Virus record (IMG/VR): IMGVR_UViG_3300033233_000001
Location: 124,001 to 188,000 of that record
Strand: one strand, 5' to 3'
DNA length: 64,000 nucleotides
The notes under the pieces are model-generated. The model was not told the DNA's origin. It did no database searches and saw only the letters and a program-made list of their open reading frames with translations. Position numbers and translations under genes: made by a program. This document shows positions 6,732-59,847 of the stretch, one piece after another; position 1 is the first letter of the stretch, and each line of letters starts with the position of its first letter.

Positions 6732-6966
6732 CGAGGTCTATCTTCAGATCCACGCCGCCCTCGAACAGGTGCAGCGCGCGGAGCCGCACCATGGGCAGAT
6801 CGGATCTGTGGACAAGGACGGCGCGCGCATTCCGATCGACCTCATCTGTCGCGACTGCTCCTCGCGCCGGCCGTGCTGGAAGATCAGCCTCGTGCTCGGC
6901 GACCTCGGCAGCGGGCGCCTCACCGACGAGCAGGCGCTCGCTGTCGTCGAAGACGCGCGACGATAG
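6724..6966 (+). CDS. hypothetical protein
   Basis: Overlapping ATG start (MSDEVYLQ); CxxC motif. Confidence 0.55.
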   Translation: MSDEVYLQIHAALEQVQRAEPHHGQIGSVDKDGARIPIDLICRDCSSRRPCWKISLVLGDLGSGRLTDEQALAVVEDARR

Positions 6967-7000
6967 CGAAGACAACCAGCTGGCGCTGATCTGAGCGCCT

Positions 7001-7192
7001 CGCGAGCGGCCCCGATGCTCTCAAAAGTACCGGACCCGCTCGCAACGACCGAAAAGACGAGGCAAAACAAGCAGATGTCGGATACTGGCTGGACGAACAC
7101 GGGCCTGCTGCTAGAGTCGACGAGAGACCAAAACGGACCCGCTCGCAAGACGGCACCGAATGCTGCGTAATGATTGGAGTTTTTCAGAGTCT
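7001..7192 (+). promoter_or_regulatory. CRISPR leader
   Basis: GCGAGCGG..CCGCTCGC inverted motif and a second GGACCCGCTCGCA ending 46 nt before the first repeat. Confidence 0.65.
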
Positions 7193-7376
7193 ATCGCAAT
7201 GGCTGCCCGGTGCCCTGAAACCGGTGACACGTCGGCGTCCTGCTCTGGTTTCAGCACGGCATGGCCGATCGCAATGGCTGCCCGGTGCCCTGAAACCGGT
7301 GACGAGGACAAGCCGACGCGCGCGTTCCAGCTCGGCCAAGATCGCAATGGCTGCCCGGTGCCCTGAAACCGGTGAC
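7193..7376 (+). CRISPR. orphan CRISPR mini-array (3 repeats, 2 spacers)
   Basis: Identical 36-nt repeats ATCGCAATGGCTGCCCGGTGCCCTGAAACCGGTGAC at 7193, 7268 and 7341; spacers of 39 and 37 nt. Confidence 0.9.
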
Positions 7377-13068: not shown

Positions 13069-14690
13069 GTTCGGACCTCCGGTCGGTATTCGCCGGGTCC
13101 GACGGACCAGATCCATTCCTGCGCCGCAAGCGCGGTGGGCACTTCTGGCGGTACCGGCATGACGAACATCCGACCTGTCCCGCAGCGCACACGAAGAAAC
13201 CTCTCGCCAGGAGAATCAGGCAGATCGACGCGCAGAAGCGTGCCGATTTCAGGGTCAGGATCGGTGTCGATCGTCTCGTGCGGTAGTGCCGCGAGAATGC
13301 CGTCCCAGCCCACGATCTCTGCGGCCGCGCGCCGCTGTTCGATCTGCGGCCAGGTCAGCGCGGTCGTCGGGTCGAGAGACCCTCGGCGTTCGATCCACTC
13401 CCGCGGAACGCGCGTTCCATGCCATGAATACACCGACCATCCGTCGCGATAGCTGAGTGCCGGACCATGCTCGGCGTGTGAGCGGTGATCGACGTCGCGC
13501 GAGATAGTCTTCGGAAAGTCGGAGACGAGGCAGAAGCGGGAGTGCATGAATCGGTGACAGCCGTAGATCGCAGCACGCTCGTAGTGAATCCAGCGGTCGT
13601 ACTCCGGCAGCCGCAGACCGGCCACTTCACGGAAGAACGATAGGTACGAGCACCATTGCCCCCAGTGATTGCCGCCGTTCCAGTTACGAGACCATTGTGC
13701 CAGCGAAGCGAGTAGAAGCCGGACCAGAGGCCCGTCCGTGGCGTCGTTCGTGGCGTCGTTCGTGGCGTCGCGCGTGGCGGCGTGCGTGGCGGCGTGCGTG
13801 GCGTCGTGCGTGGCGGCGGCGTTCGTGGCGTCGCGCGTGGCGTCGTGCGTGGCGGCGTGCGTGGCGGCGCGCGTGGCGTCGTGCGTGGCGACGTTCGTGG
13901 CGACGTTCGTGGCGTCGCGCGTGGCGTCGTGCGTGGCGGCGTTCGTGGCGTCGCGCGTGGCGTCGTGCGTGGCGGCGTGCGTGGCGGCGCGCGTGGCGAC
14001 GTTCGTGGCGGCGCTCGTGGCGACGCGCGTGGCGACGCGCGTGGCGTCGTGCGTGGCGTCGCGCGTGGCGTCGCGCGTGGCGACGCTCGTGGCGTCGCGC
14101 GTGGCGACGCTCGTGGCGACGTTCGTGGCGGCGCTCGTGGCGACGTTCGTGGCGGCGCTCGTGGCGACGCGCGTGGCGACGTTCGTGGCGACGCTCGTGG
14201 CGACGTTCGTGGCGTCGCTCGTGGCGACGTTCGTGGCGGCGCTCGTGGCGACGCGCGTGGCGACGTTCGTGGCGACGCTCGTGGCGACGTTCGTGGCGTC
14301 GCTCGGCTTTGGCAGCGGATCCAGCGGCAACCCGTGCGCCGCTTTAGCGATCCGAGCGGACGCCACTCGGATGGCAGCCGCGTAGTCCGTCTCGGTCAGC
14401 GTACGACCGCAGAGCGCCACATGCTTTTCGGGATGCTCTCGCAGCCACCAAACCATTGACGCAAAACACCAAGCGGCAGCACCGACGATTGGGCTCGGAA
14501 CGTAGATCACCGGAACCGTCGGCAGCTTAGCTGCCCGGTAGAGCCCGTCGATCGCCTCGGTGCAGAAGCGTCGATCTTCGTCCGTCTGCGGCGCGGTCCG
14601 GAGAATTCTGGAAAGCCACAGATCACGCCACTCCGGCAGGCGAGCGCGGTGCTCGTCCGTCAGCGAGTAGACAGCGCGCTTCTTGGCCAT
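13065..14690 (-). CDS. DUF6745-like protein with an internal tetrapeptide repeat
   Basis: GPALSYRDGWSVYSWHGTRVP..IEQRRAAAEIVGWD..LRVRCGT. Confidence 0.75.
   Translation of the reverse strand: MAKKRAVYSLTDEHRARLPEWRDLWLSRILRTAPQTDEDRRFCTEAIDGLYRAAKLPTVPVIYVPSPIVGAAAWCFASMVWWLREHPEKHVALCGRTLTETDYAAAIRVASARIAKAAHGLPLDPLPKPSDATNVATSVATNVATRVATSAATNVATSDATNVATSVATNVATRVATSAATNVATSAATNVATSVATRDATSVATRDATRDATHDATRVATRVATSAATNVATRAATHAATHDATRDATNAATHDATRDATNVATNVATHDATRAATHAATHDATRDATNAAATHDATHAATHAATRDATNDATNDATDGPLVRLLLASLAQWSRNWNGGNHWGQWCSYLSFFREVAGLRLPEYDRWIHYERAAIYGCHRFMHSRFCLVSDFPKTISRDVDHRSHAEHGPALSYRDGWSVYSWHGTRVPREWIERRGSLDPTTALTWPQIEQRRAAAEIVGWDGILAALPHETIDTDPDPEIGTLLRVDLPDSPGERFLRVRCGTGRMFVMPVPPEVPTALAAQEWIWSVGPGEYRPEVRT
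13738..14304. repeat. 12-bp coding tandem repeat GTGGCGnCGnnC (about 47 units)
   Basis: Encodes ATNV/ATSA/ATRD/ATHD units on the minus strand. Confidence 0.95.
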
Positions 14691-45724: not shown

Positions 45725-46028
45725 CCCGACGCACCTAACACTTCGATCTCGCATGTGTCGTACCAGCATGAGTCCGAGCGACCTGACCTGCTTGACCCTT
45801 CGATCTCGCCTGTCGAGGGGCGCTGGCGTGACGCGCGTCACGGCCCGACCTGCTTGACCCTTCGATCTCGCCTGTCGAGCAGCTGGCTAACACTGCGTGG
45901 CCATCCGATCAAAGACTACCCGACCTGCTTGACCCTTCGATCTCGCCTGTCGAGGCCTACGGCGACCTCGACGCCGGGGCCCGCGACCGTGTCCCGACCT
46001 GCTTGACCCTTCGATCTCGCCTGTCGAG
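45725..46028 (-). CRISPR. Cas12f-associated array (4 repeats plus a divergent terminal repeat)
   Basis: 36-nt repeat CTCGACAGGCGAGATCGAAGGGTCAAGCAGGTCGGG at 45993, 45919, 45844 and 45782; variant at 45725; spacers of 38, 39, 26 and 21 nt. Confidence 0.92.
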
Positions 46029-46090
46029 AGCCGTCGAAAAACACCAGCGATTCCGCGGGCCTCGTAGCCGGTCTGCGAGCGGTCCCTGTT

Positions 46091-46287
46091 CTCGACATGT
46101 GAGATCGAAGTGCCAAGCACGTTCGAGCGCTTCGTGGCCAACGCATCGAACTGGATTTCCGAACAAGTACCATTACTTGCTACGGTCCACGTACCTTCGC
46201 GAGCGGGTCCGGTACTTTTGCAAGCACCGGGGCCCCTCGCGTTCGTGCCCATCGGGGGGCACATCACCGAACTTGCGTTCGGAGAAA
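46091..46287 (-). ncRNA. tracrRNA, copy 1
   Basis: Inverted repeat copy (anti-repeat) at 46091-46126 plus hairpins; paralogous to 48632-48812. Confidence 0.8.
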
Positions 46288-47805
46288 TCATTCGGCCGCC
46301 TGCGCCTTCTCCGTGCGGGCCTTCTTTCGGATTCGACCGGACGCGCGCTTGATCGCTGCGATCTGATCCGGCAGCGGCAGCGGCTTACCGTCCCGCAGGA
46401 GCATGTTCCACGCGTAGATGACGTCGACGGGACGCTCTAGCCTGCACGTCACGACCTCACAGCAGAACTTGCCGCTCTTGCCGAAGGTCGCGCTGACCTC
46501 GGCCGAGTGCTCGTGCAGGCACGACGGACACGTCCGCGAGTTCATGTCGCTCGGCACGATCTCGACCGTCAGCCCCCGCTTCTTCGCCGCCCACTCGATG
46601 GACTCTCGCAGCTGCGCGAGCGGGAAGCTCCGCACGAGGTACTCGACGTGTTCGCCAAGCTCGGGAGCGCCATCCTTCGCTGGATTGCCCCAGTCTTCGA
46701 CGAGGATCCGCGACACGCCGCGCCTTTCGGCGAGGCGCATCGCGTGCGACGCGATCTCCTGGCACTTCGTGCGTACCCACCTGGCCTCCGCGTCTTCGAG
46801 TCGCGTGAAGTGCTCTTCGCGCCGAGCAGTGCCGTGACCCTTGGCACCGTCACCAAGCTCGCGCTTGTGCCGACCGAGTGACGAGCGCCGCGCACGGTAC
46901 GCCGCCTTGTGGGCGAGCACGTCGCCGCCGTCGGCGAGCACAGTCGTGTACGCTTCACGCCCGTCGTCGCCGCGGGCGATTGCCGCGGTCAGGAACGTCC
47001 GCACGCCTCGATGCAGAGCCATCGTGCGGCCGGTCTCGGTCTTACGGACCTCGGAAGTGAAAGACACGAAGGCCATCCACTTCCGTTTGCCATCGCGATC
47101 GTCGTCTTCGACCAGGCGGCAGTCGCCGAGGCAGGCCGGATCGGCCAGAACACGCTTCAGCGACGCGAAGCCGCTTCCGCCGTAGGGCTTCACGACCAAG
47201 CGCACCTGTGTCGGCCGGTCGCTGTCCTCGCCGAACAACGGCAGCGTCAAGATCGCCAGGCCGTCGCTCGGTTCGAGACGGATCGCGCCGTTGCCTGACG
47301 CGATGTAGATCGGAGAGCCACCCCTGAAGGTGGGAAGCGACATCTTGCCCTTCCATTTTTCCTTCCGCCACTTCTTCCAGCGCGTGAAGGCCGCACCGGC
47401 CGTACCAAGCAGGACTTTCGCGCCGGGGTACGTCGTCGCGACCTTCTCGTCGCCGTAGTACGGCTTGCCCTTCTTGACGCGTGCGGCCGCGGCCTCGCGT
47501 TCGTTGAGCCAGAGGTCACGCGTCAGCTGGTAACTCCGCGACCGCGCTAGGATCTTTCCGGCCTTCTTTGCGCCGAGCTTGCCGGCGCGCTCCTCGACTT
47601 CGAGATCGGTGATCACGCCGTTGAGGACGCGATGGATCGGAGCGCGCAGCGCGCGCAGGAGCGGCCCGAGTGCCGCCCAGTCGTGGTCGAGCGGGCGGAT
47701 CACCTCCAACCGCAGGGTCGAGACGATCTGCGCATCGACCGCCGCATCGTCTAACGCGGCCTCGACGACGAGCGGCCCCGTCTCTTCTTCAGCGGGCTCA
47801 GTCAC
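46288..47805 (-). CDS. cas12f: Cas12f1-like effector, predicted nuclease-dead (about 505 aa)
   Basis: Colinear with AsCas12f1 as recalled (LEVIRPLDHDW, GKMSLPTF, DGGD..GHG, ILVED, CPSC/CCEV Zn ribbon); RuvC-I reads MALHRG in place of MGIDLG. Confidence 0.85.
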   Translation of the reverse strand: MTEPAEEETGPLVVEAALDDAAVDAQIVSTLRLEVIRPLDHDWAALGPLLRALRAPIHRVLNGVITDLEVEERAGKLGAKKAGKILARSRSYQLTRDLWLNEREAAAARVKKGKPYYGDEKVATTYPGAKVLLGTAGAAFTRWKKWRKEKWKGKMSLPTFRGGSPIYIASGNGAIRLEPSDGLAILTLPLFGEDSDRPTQVRLVVKPYGGSGFASLKRVLADPACLGDCRLVEDDDRDGKRKWMAFVSFTSEVRKTETGRTMALHRGVRTFLTAAIARGDDGREAYTTVLADGGDVLAHKAAYRARRSSLGRHKRELGDGAKGHGTARREEHFTRLEDAEARWVRTKCQEIASHAMRLAERRGVSRILVEDWGNPAKDGAPELGEHVEYLVRSFPLAQLRESIEWAAKKRGLTVEIVPSDMNSRTCPSCLHEHSAEVSATFGKSGKFCCEVVTCRLERPVDVIYAWNMLLRDGKPLPLPDQIAAIKRASGRIRKKARTEKAQAAE

Positions 47806-48422
47806 GCTGCATCTCGACGTGACGTGCGCTTCTGTGCCTCGACGGCCGACGGGCTCGTCTCCGAGCCGGCGGCGCGCTTCGGCGTCTTCCGCAGCTGCCT
47901 GATCTCGGCACGCAGCGTGGCGTTCTCGACGCGCAGACGGTCGCACTCTTCCTTGGCCGCGACGAGTTCACTCGCGAGCGCCGTGTAACTCTTGTGACCC
48001 GCGCCCGCTCCGAGAATTCGAGAGCGCAGATCGCTCGCGAGACGACTCACGGTCTGAGCCGAGATCGGCGTCCCGTTCGTACGCTCCCACGTCCGCGCCT
48101 CGTCGAGCATCTCGCGCTGCTTGCCGGCGTCGCGGAAGCGACCGGCGGCCACAACCGCATGAATTCCCACGCCTTCGATGCCCTTCGCGCCCAGACCGTT
48201 ACGCGCTGCCCTGTACCCGTCGTATCGCGACGGGCGGCACAGGTTCGTCTGCTCCAGGAACTGGAGGAACGTGAGGCCCGTGTCCTTCCACAGGCCGGTC
48301 ACCTGTTCCGCCTCGTAGAGATACGAGAGGAAGTCGCCCTCTGCATCGTCCGCCAGCGTTCGGAGACGCTTGGCCTCGGCGATGAACTGTTCGAGCGTCG
48401 TCGACTTGTTGATTCGCGGCAT
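47802..48422 (-). CDS. 206-aa protein translationally coupled to cas12f
   Basis: GTGA overlap with the cas12f start; C-terminal coiled coil. Confidence 0.75.
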   Translation of the reverse strand: MPRINKSTTLEQFIAEAKRLRTLADDAEGDFLSYLYEAEQVTGLWKDTGLTFLQFLEQTNLCRPSRYDGYRAARNGLGAKGIEGVGIHAVVAAGRFRDAGKQREMLDEARTWERTNGTPISAQTVSRLASDLRSRILGAGAGHKSYTALASELVAAKEECDRLRVENATLRAEIRQLRKTPKRAAGSETSPSAVEAQKRTSRRDAA

Positions 48423-48429
48423 GTTCGTA

Positions 48430-48473
48430 GGTCTACACGGCCCAGGACCGTGAGTCAAGAGCTTGCGACACAC
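48430..48473 (-). promoter_or_regulatory. promoter of the partner-cas12f operon
   Basis: Box GTGTGTCGCAAGC, then TTGACT-17-TAGACC-7-ATG. Confidence 0.7.
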
Positions 48474-48506: not shown

Positions 48507-48594
48507 CCGGCACGGTCGACCTCTCGATCTGGCGCTGCGAGGTCGCTCTTGCGGCTCGCCCGACGCGCTTGACCATCGATCTCGCCGTCGCGAG
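48507..48594 (-). CRISPR. second degenerate mini-array (2 variant repeats, 17-nt spacer)
   Basis: 48559-48594 resembles the main repeat; 48507-48541 pairs with the anti-repeat at 48632-48666. Confidence 0.7.
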
Positions 48595-48631
48595 TGAGGA
48601 TGGATCGCTCTGGACCGATTACCCCGTCACG

Positions 48632-48812
48632 CTCGCAGCTCCAGATCGAAGGGCCGAACGTGTCCGAGCGCTTCATGGCCAACGCATCGAACTGGATTTC
48701 CTCATGAGCACCAGCGCTCACGAGGTCCACGTACCTTCGCGAGTGCGGCCGAGACCACCTCGCGTTCGGGCCAATCGGGTGGCCCATATCGCCGAGCTTG
48801 CGCTCGGAGAAG
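48632..48812 (-). ncRNA. tracrRNA, copy 2
   Basis: Shares GAGCGCTTC.TGGCCAACGCATCGAACTGGATTTCC, GGTCCACGTACCTTCGCGAG and CTTGCG.TCGGAGAA with copy 1. Confidence 0.8.
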
Positions 48813-49059
48813 TTCTTGTCGGACGTCATCGGCCGTCCCAGCCCTCGCGACGAGCGCGCTCCAACAGGTCGACGCGCTCGGGTCCGACCGCTGCGTGCTG
48901 CCACATCTGGACGTGGGCCTCCTCGACGTCGACGAGACGCACGATCTCGGCGTCCTCGCCGGCAAGCTGGACGAAGCCGGCCTCCGGGCGCCAAATCCAG
49001 ATCGGCCCGCAGAGTACGTTGCCGGACTTTAGCTTGATGGTGGCGTCACGCATTGGGCA

Positions 49060-49131
49060 TTCGGGGGCCAGGACTCGAACCTGGACGGGCGACTTCAAGG
49101 GACGCTGGCCTGCCGATTAGCCGAACCCCGA
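49060..49131 (-). tRNA. tRNA-Gln(TTG), atypical loop
   Basis: Cloverleaf; loop CCTTGAA. Confidence 0.7.
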
Positions 49132-49515
49132 GCAGCATTCAGGCGCTGGCTCGTTGGCGTTCGGTCTTCGCCTTCCGTCTCTCGGCCGAGCGCGCCTTGC
49201 GTTCCACAGCAAGCCGTATGCGCTCTATGCAAACCGAACACGAGTCGGACGAGAAGTCCAAGTGGACGCCGTACTCGCAGCCGTCGCTACACGCCCAGTC
49301 GTCTTCGACGTAGGGGCGCGCCTGCTCGTGCCGCATGCTCAGCATGGCAGCGGCAGGATCGAAGCCTGCCCTACGCGCTAGCGCCGCAAGCCCTTCAAGC
49401 GAGACCGCGAGGTCGCCGAGATCGTCGACGGTCACCGAGCACGTCACGCCCCGACGACGACCACTGCCATCTACGGCGTGGTTCACGTGCGGAGGCCGAT
49501 CTTCGTCCTTGGCCG

Positions 49516-49848
49516 TCATGCGGCGCTCTCCCGCGTCCGCTCGGCACGCTCGGCCTTCTCCGCCAACTCCGCATCGAAAAGCCGGCGTGCGCGTCGGCAC
49601 ACCTTGCACGCGTCCGGCGAGCAGCAGAGTTCGATCTTGTAGCCGTCCTCGCACCACTCGGTGATGTAGTTATGCTCGATCCACACGTCGCTCGGCTTGA
49701 AGCCAGCACGTTTCGCGAGCGCGGAGAGATCTGCGAGCGACCAGCCGTTCGCGCCGTCGCTGATGATGACGCAGCACTTGCCGGCGATCCAGCCGGTCCG
49801 CTTCGGCATGTCATGGACGACAACTACGGTCTTTTCAGTCTTGGCCAT
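49516..49848 (-). CDS. hypothetical protein
   Basis: MAKTEKTVVVV start; similar layout to the neighbouring ORF 49139-49519. Confidence 0.5.
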   Translation of the reverse strand: MAKTEKTVVVVHDMPKRTGWIAGKCCVIISDGANGWSLADLSALAKRAGFKPSDVWIEHNYITEWCEDGYKIELCCSPDACKVCRRARRLFDAELAEKAERAERTRESAA

Positions 49849-49850
49849 TA

Positions 49851-49921
49851 TACCCCGTACGGGAGTCGAACCCGTCTCGTCTGCGTGAAAAACAGATGGC
49901 CTCCCAGAAGCCGAACGGGGC
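49851..49921 (-). tRNA. tRNA-Glu(TTC)
   Basis: Cloverleaf. Confidence 0.8.
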
Positions 49922-49925
49922 AAAA

Positions 49926-50008
49926 GTTCCTGACAAGGGGTGCCGGCGGAAATGGGCTTGCGCCCAGTTTGTTTGGTAAACGGTAACCGCGTAGCGTCGG
50001 CCAGGAAC
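49926..50008 (-). ncRNA. Y-RNA-like element
   Basis: GCCGA..GGTTACC..CCTTGTC within a closed terminal stem. Confidence 0.7.
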
Positions 50009-50079
50009 CGGGAAAGAATACACAGGCCGAGGTCTTGCGACGAACCTCATCGAGCACGGCCTGTGGGGGAGTGATTGAA

Positions 50080-50169
50080 GTCGAGCAAGGGGAGTGACCT
50101 CGGGATCGGTGCGTGCCGGGTTAAATGCCCGGTGCGATTGAGGTGATAACCCGTGATCGTCGGCTCGAC
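50080..50169 (-). ncRNA. Y-RNA-like element
   Basis: GCCGA..GGTTATC..CCTTGC within a closed terminal stem. Confidence 0.72.
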
Positions 50170-50209
50170 TGTTGGTTTTGGTGAGACCCTTTCTAGCTGA
50201 TTGAAACTC

Positions 50210-50266
50210 CGAGCAAGGTGGTGTCCGACGGGTTTCAACCAAAGATAACCATCGGACTTCGGCTCG
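50210..50266 (-). ncRNA. Y-RNA-like element
   Basis: GCCGAAG..GGTTATC..CCTTGC immediately after the Ro60 stop. Confidence 0.72.
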
Positions 50267-50274
50267 AAGCAGAA

Positions 50275-51999
50275 CTAGTCGCGGATGAAGTCGGCGATGA
50301 CGGCCGGCGCCGCTGCGTCGAAGCCTACCACGTCGATCATGCCGGCGTCGGTCGGATCTGCGATCGTGAACTCCGACGCGTCGGTCGCGACCACGATGAG
50401 CTTGGACGCGATGCCCATGTTCTCGCGGTACTGCTTGAGCGCCACGTGCGGATGCACGGCGCCGGCCCACGTCTCGTTGTCCGTCGCGACGTAGAACGCC
50501 TCGACCTTCTGCTTCTGCGCGAGCGCGTGGAGCATCGGCAGCGCGCAGTCGGTGCCGCCCATGGGAACGGCCTCCATGGCCTTGATGACGTCGGGCAGCG
50601 TCGTCTTCGCCGTGATGTTGACCGGGAGCAGACGCGAGGGCTGGCCGCCCCAGCGTCCGCCGTAGCCAGCCGCGTGACCGGCCGAGCCGCTCGCGAAGCC
50701 CACGATGTCGTAGTCCGACTCGCGCCGCGCCGTGACCATCGCCATGCAGCCGACGGCCTCGCGTGCCGTGAGCGTCGTGCCCGCGATGAAGCTCGACGCC
50801 ATCGAACCTGACACGTCGAGCGCGAGCATGATGGACTTGCCGGTGGGCTCGACAGTCTCGAACGCCAGGTAGAACGCGTCGTCGAGGGCGTCGATGATGG
50901 ACTGCACCGGCGACCACGTCAGCTTGCCCTTCTCGCCGTGGCCGGCTGCGTACGTCTTGAGCGCGAGGAGCACTGCGATCGGATGCAGCCGCGACTTCTT
51001 GATGGCGTCGGCGTTCTTCAGCTGCTTCACGACGAGCTTCGATGCGTCCGAGCCAGGAACGAGCAGGCCGTTCGCCGTCATGCGCCCGAGGTTGCGCACG
51101 CAAGCGTGCATCGGCATGCGCTGGAGCAGCGCATCCCATACAACCGCGTGCTTCTGGTGCTCTGACGGCACCATCTCGTGAGTGAGCCCGTACTCACGGA
51201 TGATCGTGGCCGCCTCGTTCGCGTCCTTCGCAGCGCGCACCTTCTCGACGCCCTCGATCAGCGCCGGCAGGGCTCCGGCGGCGACCGCCTCGTACGAGAC
51301 GCCCGCCTCCTGCTGCTTGCGCTTGACGGAGCGCTCCCCGAGGCCGTCGCGTCCCGCGATGGTCCAGCGCAGGATGGACGAGACGATCGGATCCGTCGTC
51401 TTCGGGTGCGCCTGCCGAAGCAGGTCGCGGTGCGAGCGTCCGCCGCGCTGCTGGTACTTCAGCAGCTGGTAGGCGAGGTCTCGCCCCTCCTTGCTCGTGT
51501 ACCACGCGCCGACCGCGCGGCGCAGGCCCGAGCCCCAGCCGCGAAGCTGCTCGACCTGAGCGACGAACTCGAAGAGGTGCGTGCCGGTCCGGCACACGCG
51601 TGGCAGCGCGGCAAGCGCGAGGCGCCGCACAACCGCGTCCTCGTGGGCAGCGGCGACGGCGAGCGCGAAGATCGCCGCATCGTTCTTCGGCGCGCGACCC
51701 GACTCGCTGAGCGCAGCGATGTGCTCGACAGCGGCCGCAGCGTCGTCCTTGAGGCAGCGGCCGAGCGCGGTCGCGTTCTCCTTGACGAGCTTCTTCTCGC
51801 CGACGTGGAACGTCCCGCCCTCGGCGCCGAGGATCAGAAAACGGTCCAGCCGCTTCCAGTCGTCCACTTCAAACGTGAAGCCACCGGCCGCGTTCTTGAC
51901 CTGACGCACGTCGGCCTTCGCCGACTGCGGCGCGTCCTCGCGCGCAGCGGACACGGACTTCTTCTTCGACGCACCGAGGTGCGCGGCGTAGTTGGACAT
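50275..51999 (-). CDS. rsr: Ro60/Rsr TROVE-vWA RNA-binding protein
   Basis: NAAGGF..RFLILG, KYQQRGG..HRD, DVSGSM, GGTDCALPM, TDNETW and GFD. Confidence 0.95.
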   Translation of the reverse strand: MSNYAAHLGASKKKSVSAAREDAPQSAKADVRQVKNAAGGFTFEVDDWKRLDRFLILGAEGGTFHVGEKKLVKENATALGRCLKDDAAAAVEHIAALSESGRAPKNDAAIFALAVAAAHEDAVVRRLALAALPRVCRTGTHLFEFVAQVEQLRGWGSGLRRAVGAWYTSKEGRDLAYQLLKYQQRGGRSHRDLLRQAHPKTTDPIVSSILRWTIAGRDGLGERSVKRKQQEAGVSYEAVAAGALPALIEGVEKVRAAKDANEAATIIREYGLTHEMVPSEHQKHAVVWDALLQRMPMHACVRNLGRMTANGLLVPGSDASKLVVKQLKNADAIKKSRLHPIAVLLALKTYAAGHGEKGKLTWSPVQSIIDALDDAFYLAFETVEPTGKSIMLALDVSGSMASSFIAGTTLTAREAVGCMAMVTARRESDYDIVGFASGSAGHAAGYGGRWGGQPSRLLPVNITAKTTLPDVIKAMEAVPMGGTDCALPMLHALAQKQKVEAFYVATDNETWAGAVHPHVALKQYRENMGIASKLIVVATDASEFTIADPTDAGMIDVVGFDAAAPAVIADFIRD

Positions 52000-52037
52000 G
52001 ACGAATCTCCCAGAGACAAGAGCCCAGAGAATCAGAG

Positions 52038-52112
52038 CGTCCCATGGGGGACTCGAACCCCCGTTGCCGACGTGAGAGGCCGGCGTCCTTTGGCCATCTA
52101 GACGAATGGGAC
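52038..52112 (-). tRNA. tRNA-Glu(CTC)
   Basis: Cloverleaf. Confidence 0.88.
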
Positions 52113-52409
52113 AGGGAACTGTACAGGAACCGAAGACGAGATCAGGCCGCGACTTCTTCACCCGCGCGCGCCGGGGGCTTCGCTTCGACCTTCGGCGCGC
52201 ACTCCTTGCACACGAGCTTTTCCTTGGCGACCTCGTGTCCGAACCGCGTGTTCATCGGCCGGTCGAGGTGGTCGCGCTCGTACATGGCCACGCGGTACGA
52301 CGAGACGACGCGGACTGGGCGCGGGTCGAGCACGGTGCCGTTACGCATCGAGCCGTCGAACGCGATCCGGCAGACCTCACAGCGATAGCTCATCGGAATC
52401 ACCTTTTTC

Positions 52410-52492
52410 TGGAGAGCGGAGGACTCGAACCCCACAGCCGAAGCTGCTAACCGGTCTTCAAAGCCGGGCCGCGCCTTGCGACTTCGCCCTCC
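52410..52492 (-). tRNA. tRNA-Ser(TGA)
   Basis: Long variable arm. Confidence 0.72.
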
Positions 52493-52758
52493 GGATACGA
52501 CACACTGACATGCTGCGAAACGCTGTGCAAGCACAAACACTGCCCCCCCCCCGCAATAGACCAAGCCGCTCCGTCGCTCGCGCCGACTCGGCTAAAGGAG
52601 GCCCCAGATACGACCACCGATCTCCCAGCCGATCCGCAAGACGCATCCGCAGACCAACATGCCGAGCGTCCAGAGCAGGAAGCCGGCCGGCGTTTTCATG
52701 TCTGGCATCGCAGGTATCCTTTCGTGGCGTGACTAGGGGCTGACCAGGGACAGGAGAC

Positions 52759-52840
52759 AGGAAGGAGGAAGAGTCGAACTTCTGCGCCGAAACGCCGCGG
52801 GTTTTCGAGGCCCGTCCCACGCCGTGTGGGTTCACCTTCC
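52759..52840 (-). tRNA. tRNA-Ser(CGA)
   Basis: Long variable arm. Confidence 0.75.
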
Positions 52841-52844
52841 AGAA

Positions 52845-52932
52845 CGGAGAGAGGTGGTATCGAGCCACTGCGCCGAAGCGCCACGCGGTATTCCAAACCG
52901 GCCCGAGACCTTCTCGGTTCACCCTGCTCTCC
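52845..52932 (-). tRNA. tRNA-Ser(GGA), 5' end altered by insertion
   Basis: Anticodon GGA; the 5' strand GGAGAGCAG is supplied by the element end. Confidence 0.65.
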
Positions 52933-54223
52933 AAAATGTGATCGAACGTGTTCGTTCGGTCACGACTTGGCTCCTGCTTCCGCCACGACACTTGCTCGAC
53001 GCTGAGGCCGTCGAGTAGAGGCAGCCGTGTCCACAGGCGTAGCCTTGCGGCTGTTCCCCGAAAGCCTCGGGTACGCTTCCAAATTCAACGCGGCGTTGCG
53101 GTCTCGGTCCAGGACCAGACCGCATGCCTCGCACTCGTACGTCCTCGTGCCCAGCGACAACTCGGCCTTCACGACTCCGCAGCCGCTGCACGTCTTACTC
53201 GACGGGAACCACCGGTCAGCCACGATCACCTCGCAGCCGTAGACAGGTCCCTTCTGTATCAGCAGCGTCCTGAACATCCCCATCCCGACATCCGAGAGCG
53301 CACGCGCCAGCGAATGGTTTCTGAGCATCCCTGCCACGTTCATGCCCTCGATGACCGCCGCTTGGGTTTCACGCGCGATCTTCGTGGTCGTCTTGTGCAG
53401 GAAATCCTTCCGGATGTTCGCGACGTCTCGGTGAATCTTCGCCAGTTCCTCACGAGCCTTACGCCTGTTCGCGCTTCCCTCCTGTCTACGATGGAGCTTC
53501 CTGTTCGCACGCCGCAGCTTCTTCAACGCCTTCCGAAGCGGCTTCGGCGCGTCTAGGGGCTCTCCTCGTGACGGCACGACCGCAGTCTTGAGGCCCAGGT
53601 CGATGCCGAGGATCTCGTGCTCCGGGACGTTCGGCACCCGGAAGTCGCCCTCGACCTGAACCGACAGATACCAACGGTCGGCGATGCGCTTCACGCGACC
53701 GCCGAGGATCTTGCCGTGCAGCCTGAGCGGCTCGCGCGTCTTCACGCTGCCGATGACCGGGAGGTGAACGTGCTTGCCATCGGCAAGGAAATGGAATTTG
53801 TCGTTCGCGACGTAGAAGGCGTCACGGGTCTTGCCCTTCTTCTTGAAGTTCGGTGGTCCGACGCGTGGGCCCTGGCGCTTTCCCGTGATGCTCTTGATGT
53901 AGTTCGAGAACGCCGTGTCCAGGTCGGAGAACGCGCCGGCATTCGCGTCTCGCGGCGACTCGAAGATCCAGGGGAACGCTTCGCCCTTGATGGCGTTGAA
54001 CTGCTTCTTGAGCTTGGTCCCGCTGGGCTTCTGGCCGGCCCTGTACTGGCGGTTCCACTCGTGAAGTGCCCAGTTGTACGTGAAGCGCGCGACACCGCAT
54101 GCACGCAGCATCGCCTGGCGCTGCCGTACTGTCGGGTCGAGAGCTATGACGTGTCCGTGGATCATGTGATCGTGCGTCTGTAGTTTGTCCGTAAATGTCC
54201 GCGAAGACAAGAGCTAGCTATGG
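52924..54223 (-). mobile_element. non-autonomous IS607-like TnpB element
   Basis: Removing it rejoins GGAG|GGTGAACC, the tRNA 5' end; CGATCACAT occurs near both ends; no tnpA. Confidence 0.65.
52960..54165 (-). CDS. tnpB: TnpB RNA-guided endonuclease (intact D-E-D)
   Basis: N-terminal HTH, GIDLGLK, IEGM, CSGC/CEAC and DRDRNAALNL. Confidence 0.93.
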   Translation of the reverse strand: MIHGHVIALDPTVRQRQAMLRACGVARFTYNWALHEWNRQYRAGQKPSGTKLKKQFNAIKGEAFPWIFESPRDANAGAFSDLDTAFSNYIKSITGKRQGPRVGPPNFKKKGKTRDAFYVANDKFHFLADGKHVHLPVIGSVKTREPLRLHGKILGGRVKRIADRWYLSVQVEGDFRVPNVPEHEILGIDLGLKTAVVPSRGEPLDAPKPLRKALKKLRRANRKLHRRQEGSANRRKAREELAKIHRDVANIRKDFLHKTTTKIARETQAAVIEGMNVAGMLRNHSLARALSDVGMGMFRTLLIQKGPVYGCEVIVADRWFPSSKTCSGCGVVKAELSLGTRTYECEACGLVLDRDRNAALNLEAYPRLSGNSRKATPVDTAASTRRPQRRASVVAEAGAKS

Positions 54224-54474
54224 CTCCTACCAGAACCAGCCAGCGTCGCGCTTCGGCGGCACGATGCGCTCGTACCGTGCGATGCGGATGAGATGCGCGA
54301 CACGCGCCCGGTAGCGCTGGTTCAACCAGCGACGATACCATGAGGGCGAGCCGTCCGGGAACCGTCCGTTCTTGCCGACGCTATTGTGATGGAACGTCCG
54401 AGCCATGGTCCTCCAGGCTCGGGGCGATAGGCCCCGGGCACTAGAAGACCGCGCCTTTTCGATCACAGCGCACG

Positions 54475-54774
54475 TCAGCGTCGCCGATCGTCTCGGCGCT
54501 CGTAGCCGCCGCCGCCGCCAGGCCGCGGCTTGTCCTGCGCCTCGTTCACGTTGATCGTGCGCCCGTCCAGCGTCGAGTTGTTCATGCCCTTGATGGCGGC
54601 CTCCATCTCAGCCGGCGTGTTGTACGACACGAAGCCGAAGCCGCGCGAACGGCCGGTCTCTCGGTCGGTGATGACCTTGGCCTCGGTGACCTTGCCGAAG
54701 GGCGCGAACGCCTCCATCAGCCCCTCGTCATCGATCGACCACGGCAGGTTACCTACGAACAGCTTCTTCGCCAT
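54475..54774 (-). CDS. RRM RNA-binding protein
   Basis: RNP2 LFVGNL, RNP1 RGFGFVSY and a Gly-rich tail. Confidence 0.93.
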   Translation of the reverse strand: MAKKLFVGNLPWSIDDEGLMEAFAPFGKVTEAKVITDRETGRSRGFGFVSYNTPAEMEAAIKGMNNSTLDGRTINVNEAQDKPRPGGGGGYERRDDRRR

Positions 54775-55533
54775 CGCTCTCTCCTCAGCTAGAACAGATC
54801 ACTCATCACTCATCGGTCTCCGGCACAGGCTCGATCAGCCCAGCCTTCTCCGCTTCTTCTCTTAGCACGCCCATCGCGCAATGACACGGACCCGGATACC
54901 AACCGCCGGCACTGTACCCGGTGTCGTTGCACAAGGGACACTCGGTTGTCGAACGGTTCGGTGGCTCGTACGAGTCTGCCACGTTCTCCGCGGCGGCGTC
55001 GATCGCGTCGGCAGTCACGCGACCGGCCTCGCTCATCTTGTCGGTTGCGATGCGCACGGCGTTCGCAAGCGCTTCGAGTGCGCGCACTACGGCACGTCGA
55101 CCGCCAAGTAGCTTTCGTGCGCGCATCAGCATCGTCGTGCCCTGCTAGTAGTATCGGTTGTACGAGCACTCGGAACGGTGCCCTCGCGGCCGCATGCAGA
55201 AATCCGCACCGAGACGAGAACGCAAAAGCGGCTTGCCGCACGGCGGCTCTTCGTGACGGCTCGACCCGTCAAACCGCGACAGGCTCGGCTCGCCGATCAG
55301 TTGCGTCGGCACCGCAAGACCAAGCCGCTTCGCGGTTGCCTCACCGCGCTTTGGGCTGACCCGCCAGAGCACGAGGAGCGCTCGCGTCCGGGCGTCAGCC
55401 GCCTCATACCAAGCAGAGTGCAAGCAAAGCGGAGTGCCGCGCCTACGAGGAGGCTCAGGCGGAACGAGCGCGTGCAGCCGTGCGACCTCGGCCTGGAGAT
55501 CGACGACACGTAGTGCGCCGCGGAGCTTGCGCT

Positions 55534-55806
55534 TCATGTCTCGCGCCAGCCTTCGAGGTCGTCGATCCAGATCGGCGTCCCAGGCCCAACCCAGCCGCCG
55601 CCGATATTGAAATCGAAATACTCGTTCGCCTCCTCGTAGGTCATCCCATCACGCGTCATCAGGATGTCGAGGATCTTCTTCGTCGAGTACGCAGCCAGCG
55701 TCGGCTGACCACACCGTCGCGCGAAGCCGATGAACGCGTCGTCGAGGCCGTCAGCCGTCAGGGCATCTGGGTTCTCGTCGGCGAGTAGCTCGCGCCAAAA
55801 GATCAT
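55534..55806 (-). CDS. conserved hypothetical phage protein
   Basis: ADGLDDAFIG..EEANEYFDFNI..TP. Confidence 0.7.
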   Translation of the reverse strand: MIFWRELLADENPDALTADGLDDAFIGFARRCGQPTLAAYSTKKILDILMTRDGMTYEEANEYFDFNIGGGWVGPGTPIWIDDLEGWRET

Positions 55807-56882
55807 CGTGAGGCCTCACGTTTGTGGAAGAACCACCTTCCGAGCAGGCGTGTTTGGTGCTCCGCCTGAGCACGCGCCGCCTCAGTAAAGATCGGCGCGT
55901 CCTCTACCTGCTTCGCCAAGTGCAACATTTCCGGCTGACGGTCGAGGAACGGCATCCACTCGACCGCGATGCCGCACTGCCAACAGAACCGATCGAGCCC
56001 CCGCAGTAGCTCGTCGCGCGACATGCTCGACCAAAGACCGTGGTCCAAGCGCAAGCGCGGGAGCGGCTCCGGAAGCGACCGCGCTTGCAGCCATGCACCG
56101 CAGGAGCCGCAGCAGATTGCCAGGCCGGTCGGATCGCCACCGACCCTAGGCCCGTCGAGCATCGGCCAGCACCAGGTTCCCGGCGAGTCACTCATCGCGA
56201 GAACTCCCGCAGACGAACGACCTCATGGAGCAGCGCGCGGACGAACATCGCGTGCCGCGAGCGGTCGATCTTCTTGTCGTTCTGGACGTACTCGTGGACG
56301 ATCTCCATCGCGGCGTACCACTCCGGACTCGTCGCCCCAGCGCGGAGATATCCTGGATCGGACTCCGCGAGCTTTAGCCACGAGCGGATCGAGGTAAGCA
56401 TCTCGTCAGTCAGCGACTCGCCCTGTGCAGCGGTGATGAGCTTCCGCTCGCTAGCCTCCTCACCGGTTTTCGTTCGCTCCGGACCGGTGACCGGATCTAC
56501 CGCGCGCCCGAGCCCGCGGTTCGCCCACCACCACGTCCAATGATCTTCGGTACGGTCGACGATGGTCTGCAAGCTCTCGGTTGCCACGGCGCACACAGCA
56601 TGCATCCGCTTCGCCCACTCGCGCAAAGCCTCTGGAGTCTTCAGCTGGTCGAGTTCGTCGTAGAGCGAACACGTCGGGAGATGGTTGTCCTCCCAGAGCC
56701 CGCACTGGATGCAGCGATCGACGCTCACGCCGAAGCCCTCTTCGAGACGACGACCGTGCGCACGTACGGGCCGTCCCCTGGCACGCGTACGATCGTCGTT
56801 ACCTTGACGCCTCCGCACTTGACGCAGACGCGCGTCCTGTCCTTCTGGACATTCCAGCGCTTCCACTTGTGCTTGCAGGCGC

Positions 56883-57395
56883 TCACGCCGCCACCAGGTA
56901 CGGCCGCCAGGTTTCCGGCACCGTGCTCATGTCGAAGCGCTTGCTGACGATCGGCAGCCACTCGGGCTTCCGAGGTGCACGCCTGAGTGGCATCTTGGCC
57001 TCTGCCGGCGTCCGGTCACCCTTCTTGGCGTTGCAGACGTAGCAGGCCATCACGATGTTGTCCCACTCGGTCCGGCCGCCACGCGATCGCGGCAGCACAT
57101 GATCGTAGTTGAGAGCGCGAGGCTCGAAGACATGATGACAGTACCCGCACTCGTTCCCGTCGCGGAGAAGTACGTTCTGACGCGAGAACTTGATCGAGAC
57201 CTTCCGCGTCCTCGACTTCTTCACCTTCCTGATGACGGAAGGCATTTTCATCGAGACCGAAGGCGAGCGCAGCACCTCGTCGAATTCCTCGATCACCTCG
57301 ACCTTGTTGTCGTAGATGAGGCAGACCGCGCGCTGCCAGTCGACGATGCGCTCAGGTCTGTAGAACATGTCCAGTACCAGTACTCGGGTCTCCAT
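56883..57395 (-). CDS. HNH endonuclease
   Basis: RDGNECGYC..DHVLPRSRGG..NIVMACYVCNAKK. Confidence 0.9.
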   Translation of the reverse strand: METRVLVLDMFYRPERIVDWQRAVCLIYDNKVEVIEEFDEVLRSPSVSMKMPSVIRKVKKSRTRKVSIKFSRQNVLLRDGNECGYCHHVFEPRALNYDHVLPRSRGGRTEWDNIVMACYVCNAKKGDRTPAEAKMPLRRAPRKPEWLPIVSKRFDMSTVPETWRPYLVAA

Positions 57396-57414
57396 GACGA
57401 ACCTCGTTCAGTTG

Positions 57415-57487
57415 TGCGGACCGTGGGAGTCGAACCCACACTTTTCGGTATTTGAAGCCGATGCCTCTGCCGTTGGGCTACGTCCGC
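57415..57487 (-). tRNA. tRNA-Leu(CAA), short variable arm
   Basis: Cloverleaf; loop TTCAAAT. Confidence 0.78.
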
Positions 57488-58194: not shown

Positions 58195-58272
58195 GGTGAA
58201 CCCTCCGGGGCGGAGAGTATGTCGTAAGCGGCTTCGGAGCAAGCGCGAACGGCATGTGGTAGCATCCAGCCC

Positions 58273-58938: not shown

Positions 58939-58939
58939 C

Positions 58940-59023
58940 TGGGGTCGACAGGAGTTGCACCTGCACGTCCTTTCGGACACACGGCCCTCAACCGTGCTCG
59001 TCTGCTCGTTCCGACACGACCCC
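58940..59023 (-). tRNA. tRNA-Leu(GAG)
   Basis: Cloverleaf with variable arm. Confidence 0.8.
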
Positions 59024-59027
59024 AAAG

Positions 59028-59110: not shown

Positions 59111-59118
59111 TTATGTGA

Positions 59119-59616: not shown

Positions 59617-59620
59617 TTGG

Positions 59621-59692: not shown

Positions 59693-59697
59693 CAAGA

Positions 59698-59838: not shown

Positions 59839-59847
59839 AGATCGTAT

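What the first reader, a model, noticed from the sequence alone, without database searches (positions are those of the whole stretch)
7001..7192. Two unrelated arrays share a phased leader, and one leader motif sits inside the tracrRNA
Seen: 7001-7044 (CGCGAGCGGCCCCGATGCTCTCAAAAGTACCGGACCCGCTCGCA) matches the reverse complement of 46198-46241 at about 39/44 positions. A second CCGCTCGCA motif ends exactly 46 nt before the first repeat in both arrays. Motif-to-motif distances are 103 and 124 nt, a difference of about two helical turns. tracrRNA copy 2 has only a shortened hairpin at this position. Known: phased leader motifs direct Cas1-Cas2 integration. Inference: both arrays borrow host adaptation machinery, and a leader was grafted into the Cas12f scaffold to make it programmable.
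Basis: partly seen in the sequence, partly recalled or inferred. Interest (0 to 1): 0.75.

Follow-up and report, generated by a model that had tools for sequence, protein, structure and literature searches.

The report
Shared leader on two phage CRISPR arrays
In a 298-kb phage, an orphan CRISPR array carries a leader that copies two pieces of the phage's own Cas12f locus (one native tracrRNA stem-loop and the family's conserved array-proximal leader), so the shared motifs are real, but the tracrRNA was not built by grafting a leader into it.

Summary
7001-7043 matches the reverse complement of 46199-46241 at 39/43, with about 1e-8 such pairs expected by chance. A second CCGCTCGCA box lies 45 nt before repeat 1 in both arrays. 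The motif distances are 103 and 124 nt, and tracr copy 2 has a short hairpin.

The long hairpin is a native stem of this Cas12f family's tracrRNA. It occurs in 9 of 12 independent loci, its inner stem covaries, and it is ancestral on the Cas12f tree. The array-A leader copied it, not the reverse.

The A leader is not a tracrRNA. It has no anti-repeat, and the covariance model matches only the hairpin.

A CTCGCA box 45-46 nt before repeat 1 is conserved in all eight family loci with an intact leader, across unconserved sequence of fixed length. Array A shares this box, plus 29/45 identity with array B in the spacer segment. A second, 98% identical A leader heads another array outside the window, with different spacers.

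No Cas1, Cas2 or HU/IHF is encoded in this phage, and no Cas1 in a complete relative. A shared leader read in trans is therefore plausible but untested. Helical phasing is not conserved.

Verdict: a new variant of a known kind, of moderate interest.

The parts
6965..7000 (+). Start of the duplicated array-A leader unit. It holds the last 9 codons and stop (6992-6994) of the upstream ORF, and a small hairpin GGCGCT/AGCGCC (6982-6999).
   Evidence: The A1/A2 alignment becomes about 98% identical from here on. The fold shows the hairpin. There is no similarity to the B locus.
7001..7044 (+). Copy of the long tracrRNA stem-loop in the A1 leader. The outer stem GCGAGCGG/CCGCTCGC is perfect; the inner stem has 2 mismatches.
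   Evidence: It matches 46199-46241 at 39/43. It folds at -24.9 kcal/mol, z=-5.3. It matches tracr model R1 only at model positions 27-67, 15-17 bits.
7045..7134 (+). A-specific middle segment of the leader (90 nt). It is not a tracr core and has no anti-repeat.
   Evidence: Alignment to the B tracr core gives z=0.5. RNAduplex of the A leader against repeat A gives z=+1.0. There is no R1 match here.
7135..7147 (+). Motif 2 (GGACCCGCTCGCA), the CTCGCA box. With its flanks it is an exact 15-nt direct copy of the 3' end of the hairpin (7030-7044 region).
   Evidence: The position relative to repeat 1 is.
7148..7192 (+). Array-proximal leader of A1 (44-45 nt), with a TAATGA box and a GTTTTTC run.
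   Evidence: 29/45 identical to the B proximal leader, z=4.7.
7192..7376 (+). CRISPR array A1: three 37-nt repeats with spacers of 38 and 36 nt. No effector gene lies nearby.
   Evidence: (D9). Pfam on the neighbouring ORFs found no cas gene.
46288..47805 (-). Cas12f-like effector gene (about 505 aa). The start is inferred at the overlap with the upstream ORF.
   Evidence: Pfam PF07282 and NCBIfam Cas12f2/TnpB give weak hits. The family profile matches AsCas12f structures 8J12, 8DZJ and 7WJU at E about 1e-40. 37 homologues were found.
47802..48473 (-). Conserved partner ORF (about 200-223 aa, coiled-coil-like), found directly upstream of cas12f in every locus whose gene calls were examined.
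   Evidence: The gene tables show it. There is no Pfam family for it.
46090..46287 (-). tracrRNA gene. It has hairpin 0 (46282-46267), hairpin 1 (46262-46245), the long hairpin, the core stems, and an anti-repeat (about 46128-46090).
   Evidence: R1 scores 155.6 bits. The anti-repeat duplex gives z=-6.3. The whole fold gives z=-5.6.
46198..46241 (-). Long stem-loop of the tracrRNA. The inner stem is a perfect 9 bp with a GCAA loop. This is the partner of 7001-7044.
   Evidence: It folds at -32 kcal/mol, z=-5.2. Homologous long stems occur in 8 other loci.
46074..46086 (-). Motif 2 of the B locus (GGGACCGCTCGCA), directly after the anti-repeat.
46029..46073 (-). Array-proximal leader of B (45 nt), with a GGAATC box and a GTTTTTC run.
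45725..46028 (-). CRISPR array B: four 36-nt repeats plus one degenerate terminal repeat. Spacers are 38, 39, 26 and 21 nt, so the array decays towards the trailer end.
   Evidence: (D5, D6).
48520..48830 (-). tracr-like copy 2, with the short hairpin at 48765-48737. A degenerate B-type repeat (48594-48559) and a further remnant follow. It lies upstream of the partner-ORF/cas12f operon.
   Evidence: R1 scores 135 bits. Pairing with repeat B gives z=-3.4. L002, L003 and L004 also carry a tracr-like copy with the short hairpin upstream of the operon.

Best explanation
7001-7192 is the leader of an orphan CRISPR array (A1). A second array (A2), 43 kb away in the same 298-kb phage genome, has a near-identical leader.

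The leader is a mosaic. Two separate blocks are shared with the phage's own type V-F (Cas12f) locus.
(i) The first block is the long stem-loop of the tracrRNA. That stem is an ancestral structural stem of this tracrRNA family.
(ii) The second block is the family's array-proximal leader. It consists of a CTCGCA box held 45-46 nt before repeat 1, followed by a spacer segment of fixed length.

The tracr core and the anti-repeat between the two blocks are absent from A. The A leader is therefore not a tracrRNA, and nothing was grafted into the Cas12f guide scaffold. The direction is tracr locus to A leader, by recombination or gene conversion within this genome.

Inferred function. The array-proximal block is the cis signal read at the leader-repeat junction. 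Most likely it positions a spacer integrase supplied in trans by the host, since neither this phage nor a complete relative encodes one. It may also drive pre-crRNA transcription.

The phage has ported this V-F leader onto a heterologous array with the same geometry (36-nt repeat, spacers of about 38 nt).

In A the hairpin copy is probably kept for the sequence of its 3' arm. That arm repeats the box exactly over 15 nt. Alternatively the hairpin is a passenger.

Shown: the anatomy, the homologies, the direction of transfer, the absence of an anti-repeat, and the conservation of box and spacing. Inferred: what reads the box.
For: Hairpin is native to the tracrRNA:
- The long form occurs in winB, L023, L017, L018, L025, L026, L028, L050 and L027. 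Outer stem GCGAG/CTCGC is invariant. Inner stems differ in sequence but all pair; fold z-scores run from -3.7 to -6.7.
- The family alignment shows covarying stems elsewhere in the RNA.
- All outgroups on the Cas12f tree carry the long form.

A leader is not a tracrRNA:
- Model R1 scores 155, 135 and 94 bits on three true copies. On A1 and A2 it scores only 15-17 bits, restricted to the hairpin.
- There is no anti-repeat: z=+1.0, against z=-6.3 for B.
- The middle and upstream segments are unrelated to B.
- The A leader RNA is not otherwise structured (z=-0.9).

Leader block:
- CTCGCA lies at 44-46 nt from repeat 1 in winB, A1/A2, L023, L018, L025, L026, L028 and L050 (read).
- The 45 nt in between are near-random between lineages, with z between -0.9 and 2.5 for most pairs.
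- A vs B in that segment is 29/45 identical, z=4.7.

Polarity and turnover:
- A1 and A2 have 98% identical leaders and no shared spacer.
- Repeats and spacers degenerate at the end far from the leader.

No adaptation genes:
- Cas1, Cas2 and HU/IHF are absent from the phage.
- Cas1 is absent from the complete 392-kb relative G001.
- No Pfam hit to Cas1, Cas2 or Cas4 appears in the precomputed gene tables around the family loci read.

Precedents:
- Huge-phage CRISPR loci usually lack Cas1, Cas2 and Cas4 (PMC7162821).
- Type IV-A3 arrays acquire spacers with host I-E Cas1/2 in trans (10.1101/2023.06.23.546257).
Against: - No integrase, host or acquisition event has been observed.
- The only run holding this phage is kept as contigs, and they break at the repeated leader.
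- Known in-trans adaptation relies on similarity of both repeat and leader to the donor system. Here the A and B repeats are unrelated in sequence, which one integrase may not tolerate.
- A fixed 45-nt spacing could also reflect a promoter or processing constraint, or simply a lack of indels.
- A third array type in the genome (C) has no such leader.
- A1 and A2 are a recent duplicate pair. They give no independent evidence that the hairpin copy is under selection in A. Its inner stem carries two uncompensated mismatches.
Confidence: 0.5

Rival explanations
1. The shared blocks are expression signals. The CTCGCA box and the AATC-type box form a phage- or host-specific promoter, or a regulator binding site, for pre-crRNA. 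The hairpin is a 5' stabiliser or processing site. Arrays A and B are then simply co-regulated.
For: - The conserved blocks (CTCGCA, a GTAAC-like box, and GAAATC/GGAATC/TAATGA about 20 nt further on) resemble a two- or three-box promoter layout.
- A coiled-coil ORF with weak bZIP/HALZ-type hits is always coupled to cas12f and could be a DNA-binding regulator.
- The exact 15-nt direct duplication of the box sequence in the A leader looks like two sites for one factor.
Against: - No sigma-70-like promoter is found in either leader.
- The box is not a general promoter of this phage: CCGCTCGCA occurs at chance frequency elsewhere.
- A promoter does not need its distance to repeat 1 held to within 1 nt across lineages whose Cas12f proteins are only 47-58% identical to the window's.
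Confidence: 0.22
2. The similarity is a neutral relic. The A leader descends from a V-F tracr-leader region whose core was replaced, or it received two gene-conversion patches. The shared blocks have no function in A.
For: - Homology is patchy, and the hairpin's inner stem in A has two uncompensated mismatches.
- A1 and A2 are a recent duplication that even carries the last 9 codons of an upstream ORF. This suggests sloppy recombination rather than design.
- The A leader RNA is not structured overall.
Against: - Divergence is very uneven: hairpin 91%, box 12/13, proximal leader 64%, and the rest random. Uniform neutral decay from one event would not give this.
- The box keeps the family-wide 45-nt spacing in A.
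- A1 and A2 have completely different spacers, so the arrays were active after the duplication.
Confidence: 0.15
3. The hairpin copy works at the RNA level. It recruits Cas12f (or its partner protein) to the array-A transcript, for processing or loading, or as a decoy that titrates the protein.
For: - The copied element is a protein-facing stem of a tracrRNA whose outer stem and flanks are invariant in the family.
- It sits at the 5' end of the presumed A transcript.
- No effector for array A was found in the phage.
Against: - A lacks every other conserved tracr element, including the invariant GAAGGT that follows the stem, and it lacks any anti-repeat.
- Many family tracrRNAs do without the long form, so the copied distal part is probably dispensable for protein binding.
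- No complex prediction or binding test was done.
Confidence: 0.08
4. A host-type leader motif was inserted into the Cas12f tracrRNA to make it programmable, and the two motifs are helically phased integration signals.
For: The window's closest sequenced relatives L003, L021 and L022, and all copy-2 RNAs, have the short hairpin. On its own that could suggest an insertion in the window's tracrRNA.
Against: - L023, in the same clade, and all outgroups (L017, L018, L025, L026, L028, plus L050 and L027) have the long stem with covarying inner pairs.
- Motif-to-motif distances in the family are 113-127 nt, with no common phase.
- The anti-repeat explains programmability.
Confidence: 0.03

Closest known systems
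Type V-F CRISPR-Cas (Cas12f/Cas14) with tracrRNA, as in AsCas12f (PDB 8J12, 8DZJ, 7WJU)
   Same: - A small TnpB-derived effector; the profile match to AsCas12f is E about 1e-40.
- A tracrRNA lies between the gene and the array, with several 5' stems and a 3' anti-repeat that pairs with the whole repeat.
   Different: - The family was found only in phage or metagenome contigs. It is absent from 185,579 species genomes.
- It is always coupled to a coiled-coil ORF of about 200 aa.
- It carries extra tracr-like copies.
- An invariant His replaces the RuvC-I Asp.
- No cas1, cas2 or cas4 lies nearby.
CRISPR systems of huge phages (Al-Shayeb et al. 2020, PMC7162821)
   Same: - A phage genome over 200 kb with many tRNAs.
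- Compact arrays and class 2 effectors, including Cas14-like ones.
- No Cas1, Cas2 or Cas4.
- That paper also describes a Cas14 lacking a catalytic residue.
   Different: The held text of that paper was searched only for Cas1, Cas14 and spacer acquisition. The passages returned do not describe a leader shared between arrays of different repeat types, a conserved box at fixed distance, or multiple tracr-like copies.
In-trans adaptation of systems without Cas1-Cas2: type IV-A3 arrays served by host type I-E Cas1/2e (10.1101/2023.06.23.546257)
   Same: A mobile-element CRISPR locus without an adaptation module, whose arrays nevertheless differ in spacer content. Leader similarity is the proposed handle for a foreign integrase.
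   Different: In that system both repeat and leader resemble the host's, and integration was shown experimentally. Here the host is unknown, nothing has been shown, and the two arrays that share the leader have unrelated repeats.
Leader motifs for Cas1-Cas2 in type I-E/I-F systems: an upstream motif brought to the integrase by IHF bending (my own knowledge of the field, not checked here)
   Same: A short conserved box some tens of nt upstream of repeat 1, separated by DNA of fixed length and unconstrained sequence.
   Different: No clear IHF consensus is present in these leaders (read). The box lies at -45 to -51. No integrase is known for this system.
Stand-alone repeat / cr-like regulatory RNAs in cas loci (Shmakov et al. 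2023, PMC10120712)
   Same: Copy 2 is a tracr-like RNA plus one or two degenerate repeats. It sits upstream of the effector operon, like the mini-arrays proposed to autoregulate cas genes.
   Different: This concerns copy 2, not the finding itself. No target site in the operon promoter was identified.

Membership tests
Type V-F CRISPR-Cas locus (array B with its neighbours) | Cas12f-type effector: TnpB-like RuvC plus zinc-ribbon (TNB) domains, about 400-550 aa | tested here: met
   PF07282 scores 25.9 bits (cut-off 26.3) and NCBIfam Cas12f2/TnpB hits are weak. The family profile matches AsCas12f chains at E=2.5e-40 over residues 116-435.
Type V-F CRISPR-Cas locus (array B with its neighbours) | Complete RuvC catalytic triad (D-E-D) | tested here: not met
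   The family has ALHRGV where AsCas12f has GIDLGV. The His is invariant in all 23 aligned sequences. The Glu and the second Asp are kept. Nuclease activity is therefore uncertain.
Type V-F CRISPR-Cas locus (array B with its neighbours) | tracrRNA with an anti-repeat complementary to the array's repeat, next to the array | tested here: met
   The duplex is -50.5 kcal/mol, z=-6.3, and spans all 36 nt of the repeat. The RNA family is conserved and covarying.
This tracrRNA family (is the array-A leader 6965-7191 a member?) | Full-length match to the family covariance model (hairpin 1, hairpin 2, GAAGGT, core stem) | tested here: not met
   R1 matches only model positions 27-67, at 15-17 bits and E about 0.02-0.05, equally on both strands. 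True copies score 94-156 bits.
This tracrRNA family (is the array-A leader 6965-7191 a member?) | Anti-repeat complementary to the adjacent array's repeat | tested here: not met
   Best duplex of leader A with repeat A is -27.5 kcal/mol, z=+0.97 against shuffled repeats. The best scores of a genome-wide duplex scan were the arrays' own antisense strands; lower ranks were not inspected. A mismatch search on both strands found no inverted copy of repeat A elsewhere.
CRISPR leader with integrase-positioning motif | Conserved motif at a fixed distance from the leader-repeat junction in related loci | tested here: met
   CTCGCA lies 44-46 nt before repeat 1 in winB, A1, A2, L023, L018, L025, L026, L028 and L050. 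The intervening sequence is not conserved.
CRISPR leader with integrase-positioning motif | A cognate Cas1-Cas2 integrase (in cis or in the host) | tested here: not met
   No Cas1 or Cas2 is found in the phage. No Cas1 is found in the complete relative G001. No Pfam hit to Cas1, Cas2 or Cas4 appears in the gene tables of the other loci. The host is unknown.
CRISPR leader with integrase-positioning motif | Polarised, leader-end spacer gain | tested here: inconclusive
   Indirect support only. A1 and A2 share the leader but no spacer, and both array types decay at the far end. Contigs of the only run break at the repeats. L018 and L019 have identical arrays.
In-trans adaptation of the type IV-A3 / I-E kind | Repeat and leader resemble those of a co-resident host system that has Cas1-Cas2 | not testable with these tools
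   Part of repeat A (22 nt) has no exact match in the species-genome collection. Repeat A gives no array in IMG/VR. The hairpin 22-mer is absent from IMG/VR. No host genome could be named.

The most novel reading that the evidence does not exclude
A phage-only Cas12f lineage has no adaptation genes and carries an invariant His in place of the RuvC-I Asp. It keeps a dedicated, portable leader cassette: a CTCGCA box exactly 45 nt before repeat 1. Through this cassette a host integrase loads spacers in trans. This phage has moved the cassette onto a heterologous orphan array. The leader, rather than the repeat, would then decide which arrays a borrowed integrase serves.
Probability: 0.2. Interest if true: 0.75.

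Novelty: new variant of a known kind. Interest (0 to 1): 0.45.

Why it matters
Phage CRISPR loci nearly always lack Cas1-Cas2, and how their arrays gain spacers is an open question.

Here a whole phage-borne Cas12f family keeps one short box at a fixed distance from repeat 1. One phage has reused that leader for an unrelated array. This gives a concrete, mutable cis element, and a natural pair of arrays with the same leader but different repeats. With them the idea of adaptation in trans can be tested.

The work also corrects the attractive but wrong idea that a tracrRNA was assembled from leader DNA. Along the way it documents a tracrRNA family with variable-length stems, extra orphan copies, and an effector that has lost a catalytic Asp.

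Tried and rejected
- **Anti-repeat for repeat A.** RNAduplex of the A leader, the B tracr, copy 2, copy 3 and the 3' part of the TnpB gene against repeat A gave nothing above shuffles. The idea that the A leader is a second tracrRNA was rejected.
- **Are repeat A and the V-F repeats related?** Not significantly: z<=1.1 against six family repeats. A weak similarity to the third repeat type C exists (23/37, p=0.002).
- **Effector for array A.**
  - phmmer found no Cas12f paralogue.
  - The five largest proteins without Pfam hits also had no NCBIfam or PADLOC cas hits.
  - ORFs next to A2 are sugar-modification genes and a UvrD-intein helicase.
  - The 542-aa ORF beside array C is an ordinary, very abundant IS605 TnpB.
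- **Relatives and hosts.**
  - GenBank phages gave no match to the A locus and only an 82-nt weak hit inside the cas12f gene for the B locus.
  - IMG/VR exact scans for the hairpin and for repeat A gave nothing or single chance hits.
  - Species genomes had no repeat A and no Cas12f relative.
  - 'Relatives' cannot be drawn for a virus record.
- **Rfam.** No family matches either locus.
- **Promoter and terminator scans.** Nothing was found in either leader.
- **Self-targeting by spacers.** None was found.
- **Reads.** Only one DNA run holds the phage. Its contigs break at the duplicated leader, so nothing can be said on spacer turnover.
- **IHF-type site in the proximal leader.** I looked by eye and found no convincing consensus.

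Full report
**Setting**

The window is bases 124001-188000 of a single 297,749-bp contig of 65% G+C. It is an IMG/VR virus record from a sediment metagenome, about 90% complete by CheckV, with about 33 tRNA genes in the window. It is a jumbo phage.

**The observation**

- The repeat finder reports arms 7001-7043 and 46199-46241 as a 43-nt inverted pair at 91%. About 1e-8 such pairs are expected by chance in the window.
- Array A1 has three 37-nt repeats at 7192-7376 on the plus strand.
- Array B has four 36-nt repeats plus a degenerate one at 46028-45725. It is read on the minus strand, downstream of a Cas12f-like gene at 47805-46288.
- A second box, GGACCCGCTCGCA (7135-7147) or GGGACCGCTCGCA (46086-46074), lies 44/45 and 45 nt before repeat 1.
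- The motif-to-motif distances are 103 and 124 nt.
- A second tracr-like copy at 48789-48642 has a short hairpin at the homologous place.

1. The genome holds a second A-type array (A2, five repeats, genome 87309-87644, minus strand). Its leader is about 98% identical to 6965-7191, and all its spacers differ from those of A1. The duplicated unit even includes the last nine codons and the stop of the upstream ORF in both places.
2. The 45 nt between the box and repeat 1 are also similar in A and B: 29/45, z=4.7.
3. The segment between hairpin and box (90 nt in A, 111 nt in B) and the segment before the hairpin are unrelated in A and B.

The similarity therefore consists of two separate blocks.

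**The B locus is a type V-F system**

- The effector has 37 homologues at 35-74% identity, nearly all from metagenome assemblies.
- A profile of the family matches AsCas12f structures at E about 1e-40.
- I fetched loci from more than a dozen contigs carrying relatives.
- Downstream of every cas12f gene lies a conserved RNA with covarying stems. It ends in an anti-repeat.
- In the window the anti-repeat pairs with the whole repeat at -50.5 kcal/mol, z=-6.3. The entire tracr-leader-repeat RNA folds with z=-5.6.

**The hairpin belongs to the tracrRNA**

- At the position of 46241-46198, nine of twelve independent primary tracrRNAs have a long stem-loop of 41-44 nt. These are the window, L023, L017, L018, L025, L026, L028, L050 and L027.
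- The outer stem GCGAG/CTCGC and the following GAAGGT are invariant.
- Each locus has its own inner-stem sequence, and each still forms 6-10 pairs.
- L003, L021, L022 and all copy-2 RNAs have a short form.
- On the Cas12f tree the window falls in a well-supported clade that contains both forms, and all outgroup lineages have the long form.
- The long stem is therefore ancestral and structural. It was not inserted into the scaffold.
- The inner stem differs between lineages, yet the A copies match the window's own version at 39-40 of 43 positions. The A leader must have obtained it from, or been homogenised with, this genome's tracrRNA.

**The A leader is not a tracrRNA**

- A covariance model of the tracr core (R1) finds three full copies in the genome. 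These are the primary one (156 bits), copy 2 (135 bits) and a new orphan copy 3 at genome 71588-71721 (94 bits).
- In A1 and A2 it finds only the hairpin, at 15-17 bits.
- No anti-repeat to repeat A was detected in the A leader (z=+1.0) or elsewhere in the genome.
- The A leader RNA is not significantly structured beyond its two hairpins.

**The box is a conserved family leader element**

- CTCGCA lies 45 or 46 nt before repeat 1 in the window, L023, L018, L025, L026, L028 and L050, and 44/45 nt in A1 and A2.
- The intervening sequence is close to random between lineages, apart from a GTAAC-like and a GAAATC-like box.
- By contrast, the distance from the hairpin to the box varies from 113 to 127 nt, with no common helical phase. 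The '21 nt, two turns' relation has no support beyond the two cases.
- Length conservation to within 1 nt across DNA that has otherwise randomised, including in an array with an unrelated repeat, points to something measured from the leader-repeat junction.

**Adaptation genes**

- The phage has no Cas1, Cas2 or HU/IHF.
- The complete 392-kb relative has no Cas1.
- No Pfam hit to Cas1, Cas2 or Cas4 appears in the gene tables near any family locus read.
- This agrees with what is reported for huge phages in general (PMC7162821).
- Adaptation in trans has an experimental precedent in type IV-A3 systems (10.1101/2023.06.23.546257). There, however, the repeats also resemble the donor's.
- Here A and B share geometry (36-nt repeat if base 7192 is not counted, leader-proximal spacers of 36-39 nt) but not repeat sequence.

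**Conclusion on mechanism**

With good confidence, 7001-7192 is a mosaic leader that borrowed a tracr stem and the V-F family leader.

With moderate confidence, the array-proximal block is the functional part, read by a trans-acting integrase and/or the transcription apparatus.

In A the 3' arm of the hairpin is identical to B over 22 nt, while the 5' arm has drifted without compensation. The last 15 nt of that arm recur exactly as the box. This fits selection on the sequence of that arm rather than on the RNA stem. With only one recent duplicate pair, however, it is a hint and not a result.

**Limits**

- No RNA data and no independent population data exist for this phage.
- No effector for array A was found.

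Noticed in passing
L001:9309-9870 (genome 87309-87870, minus strand), outside the window: Second A-type array (A2): five repeats, four spacers that all differ from those of A1, and a leader about 98% identical to 6965-7191. It lies directly after a 1122-aa UvrD-type helicase that contains a LAGLIDADG intein. The duplicated unit supplies the last 9 codons and the stop of the upstream ORF at both sites.
   Followed up: yes
L007:8435-8537 and L007:10328-10511 (genome 48435-50511): A third CRISPR repeat type (array C, 36-nt repeat ending in a hairpin plus GAC). It is split into 1.5 and 3 repeats by an IS605-type TnpB gene with more than 1400 close homologues. It has no CTCGCA leader. Repeat C is weakly similar to repeat A (23/37, p=0.002).
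   Followed up: partly
L008:11588-11721 (genome 71588-71721, minus strand): A third, orphan tracr-like RNA (94 bits with the family model, short hairpin). It sits next to a GroES-like gene, with no repeat beside it.
   Followed up: partly
window 48830-48520 (-), also L002:4122-4267, L003:2570-2713, L004:3234-3377: A tracr-like 'copy 2' lies upstream of the partner-ORF/cas12f operon. In the window, one or two degenerate repeats follow it. In the window, L002 and L003 it lies just after a tRNA or tRNA-like sequence. The layout recalls autoregulatory cr-like RNAs, but no target in the operon promoter was found.
   Followed up: partly
window 46288-47805 (-), residues around ALHRGV: In all 23 aligned family members the RuvC-I catalytic Asp is replaced by His (ALHRGV against GIDLGV in AsCas12f). 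The RuvC-II Glu and RuvC-III Asp are kept. The effector may bind without cutting, or may use an altered active site.
   Followed up: partly
window 47802-48473 (-) and the ORF before cas12f in L002, L003, L004, L017, L018, L050, L051: An ORF of about 195-225 aa without a Pfam family (only weak coiled-coil or bZIP-like hits) precedes cas12f. In most loci it overlaps the cas12f start, so it is a conserved partner of unknown role.
   Followed up: no
L005:10354-11670 (genome 10354-11670, minus strand): A further TnpB/Cas12f-like protein of 438 aa (PADLOC Cas12f and Cas12u4 models, E about 1e-67). No array was seen next to it.
   Followed up: no
window 45654-45626 (-), 48470-48440 (-); L003:2755-2785; L023:5160-5180: A recurring promoter-like sequence GTGTGTCG.AAGC..TTGAC lies before the genes that follow the array and copy 2. 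The window copy at 45654 scores 10/12 as a sigma-70 promoter.
   Followed up: no
window 13695-14440: A long run of 12-nt tandem repeats (about 47-60 copies) inside a 541-aa ORF on the minus strand. ARAGORN calls a spurious tRNA-Thr there.
   Followed up: no
window 49060-63859 (-): A cluster of about 32 tRNA genes on the minus strand, covering most amino acids.
   Followed up: no
window 7192, 7267, 7340 and the A2 repeats: The first base of the A 'repeat' varies: T next to the leader, G five times, C once. It may be spacer-derived, like the PAM-derived base of type I-E. The true repeat would then be 36 nt, and the box spacing exactly 45 nt as in B.
   Followed up: partly
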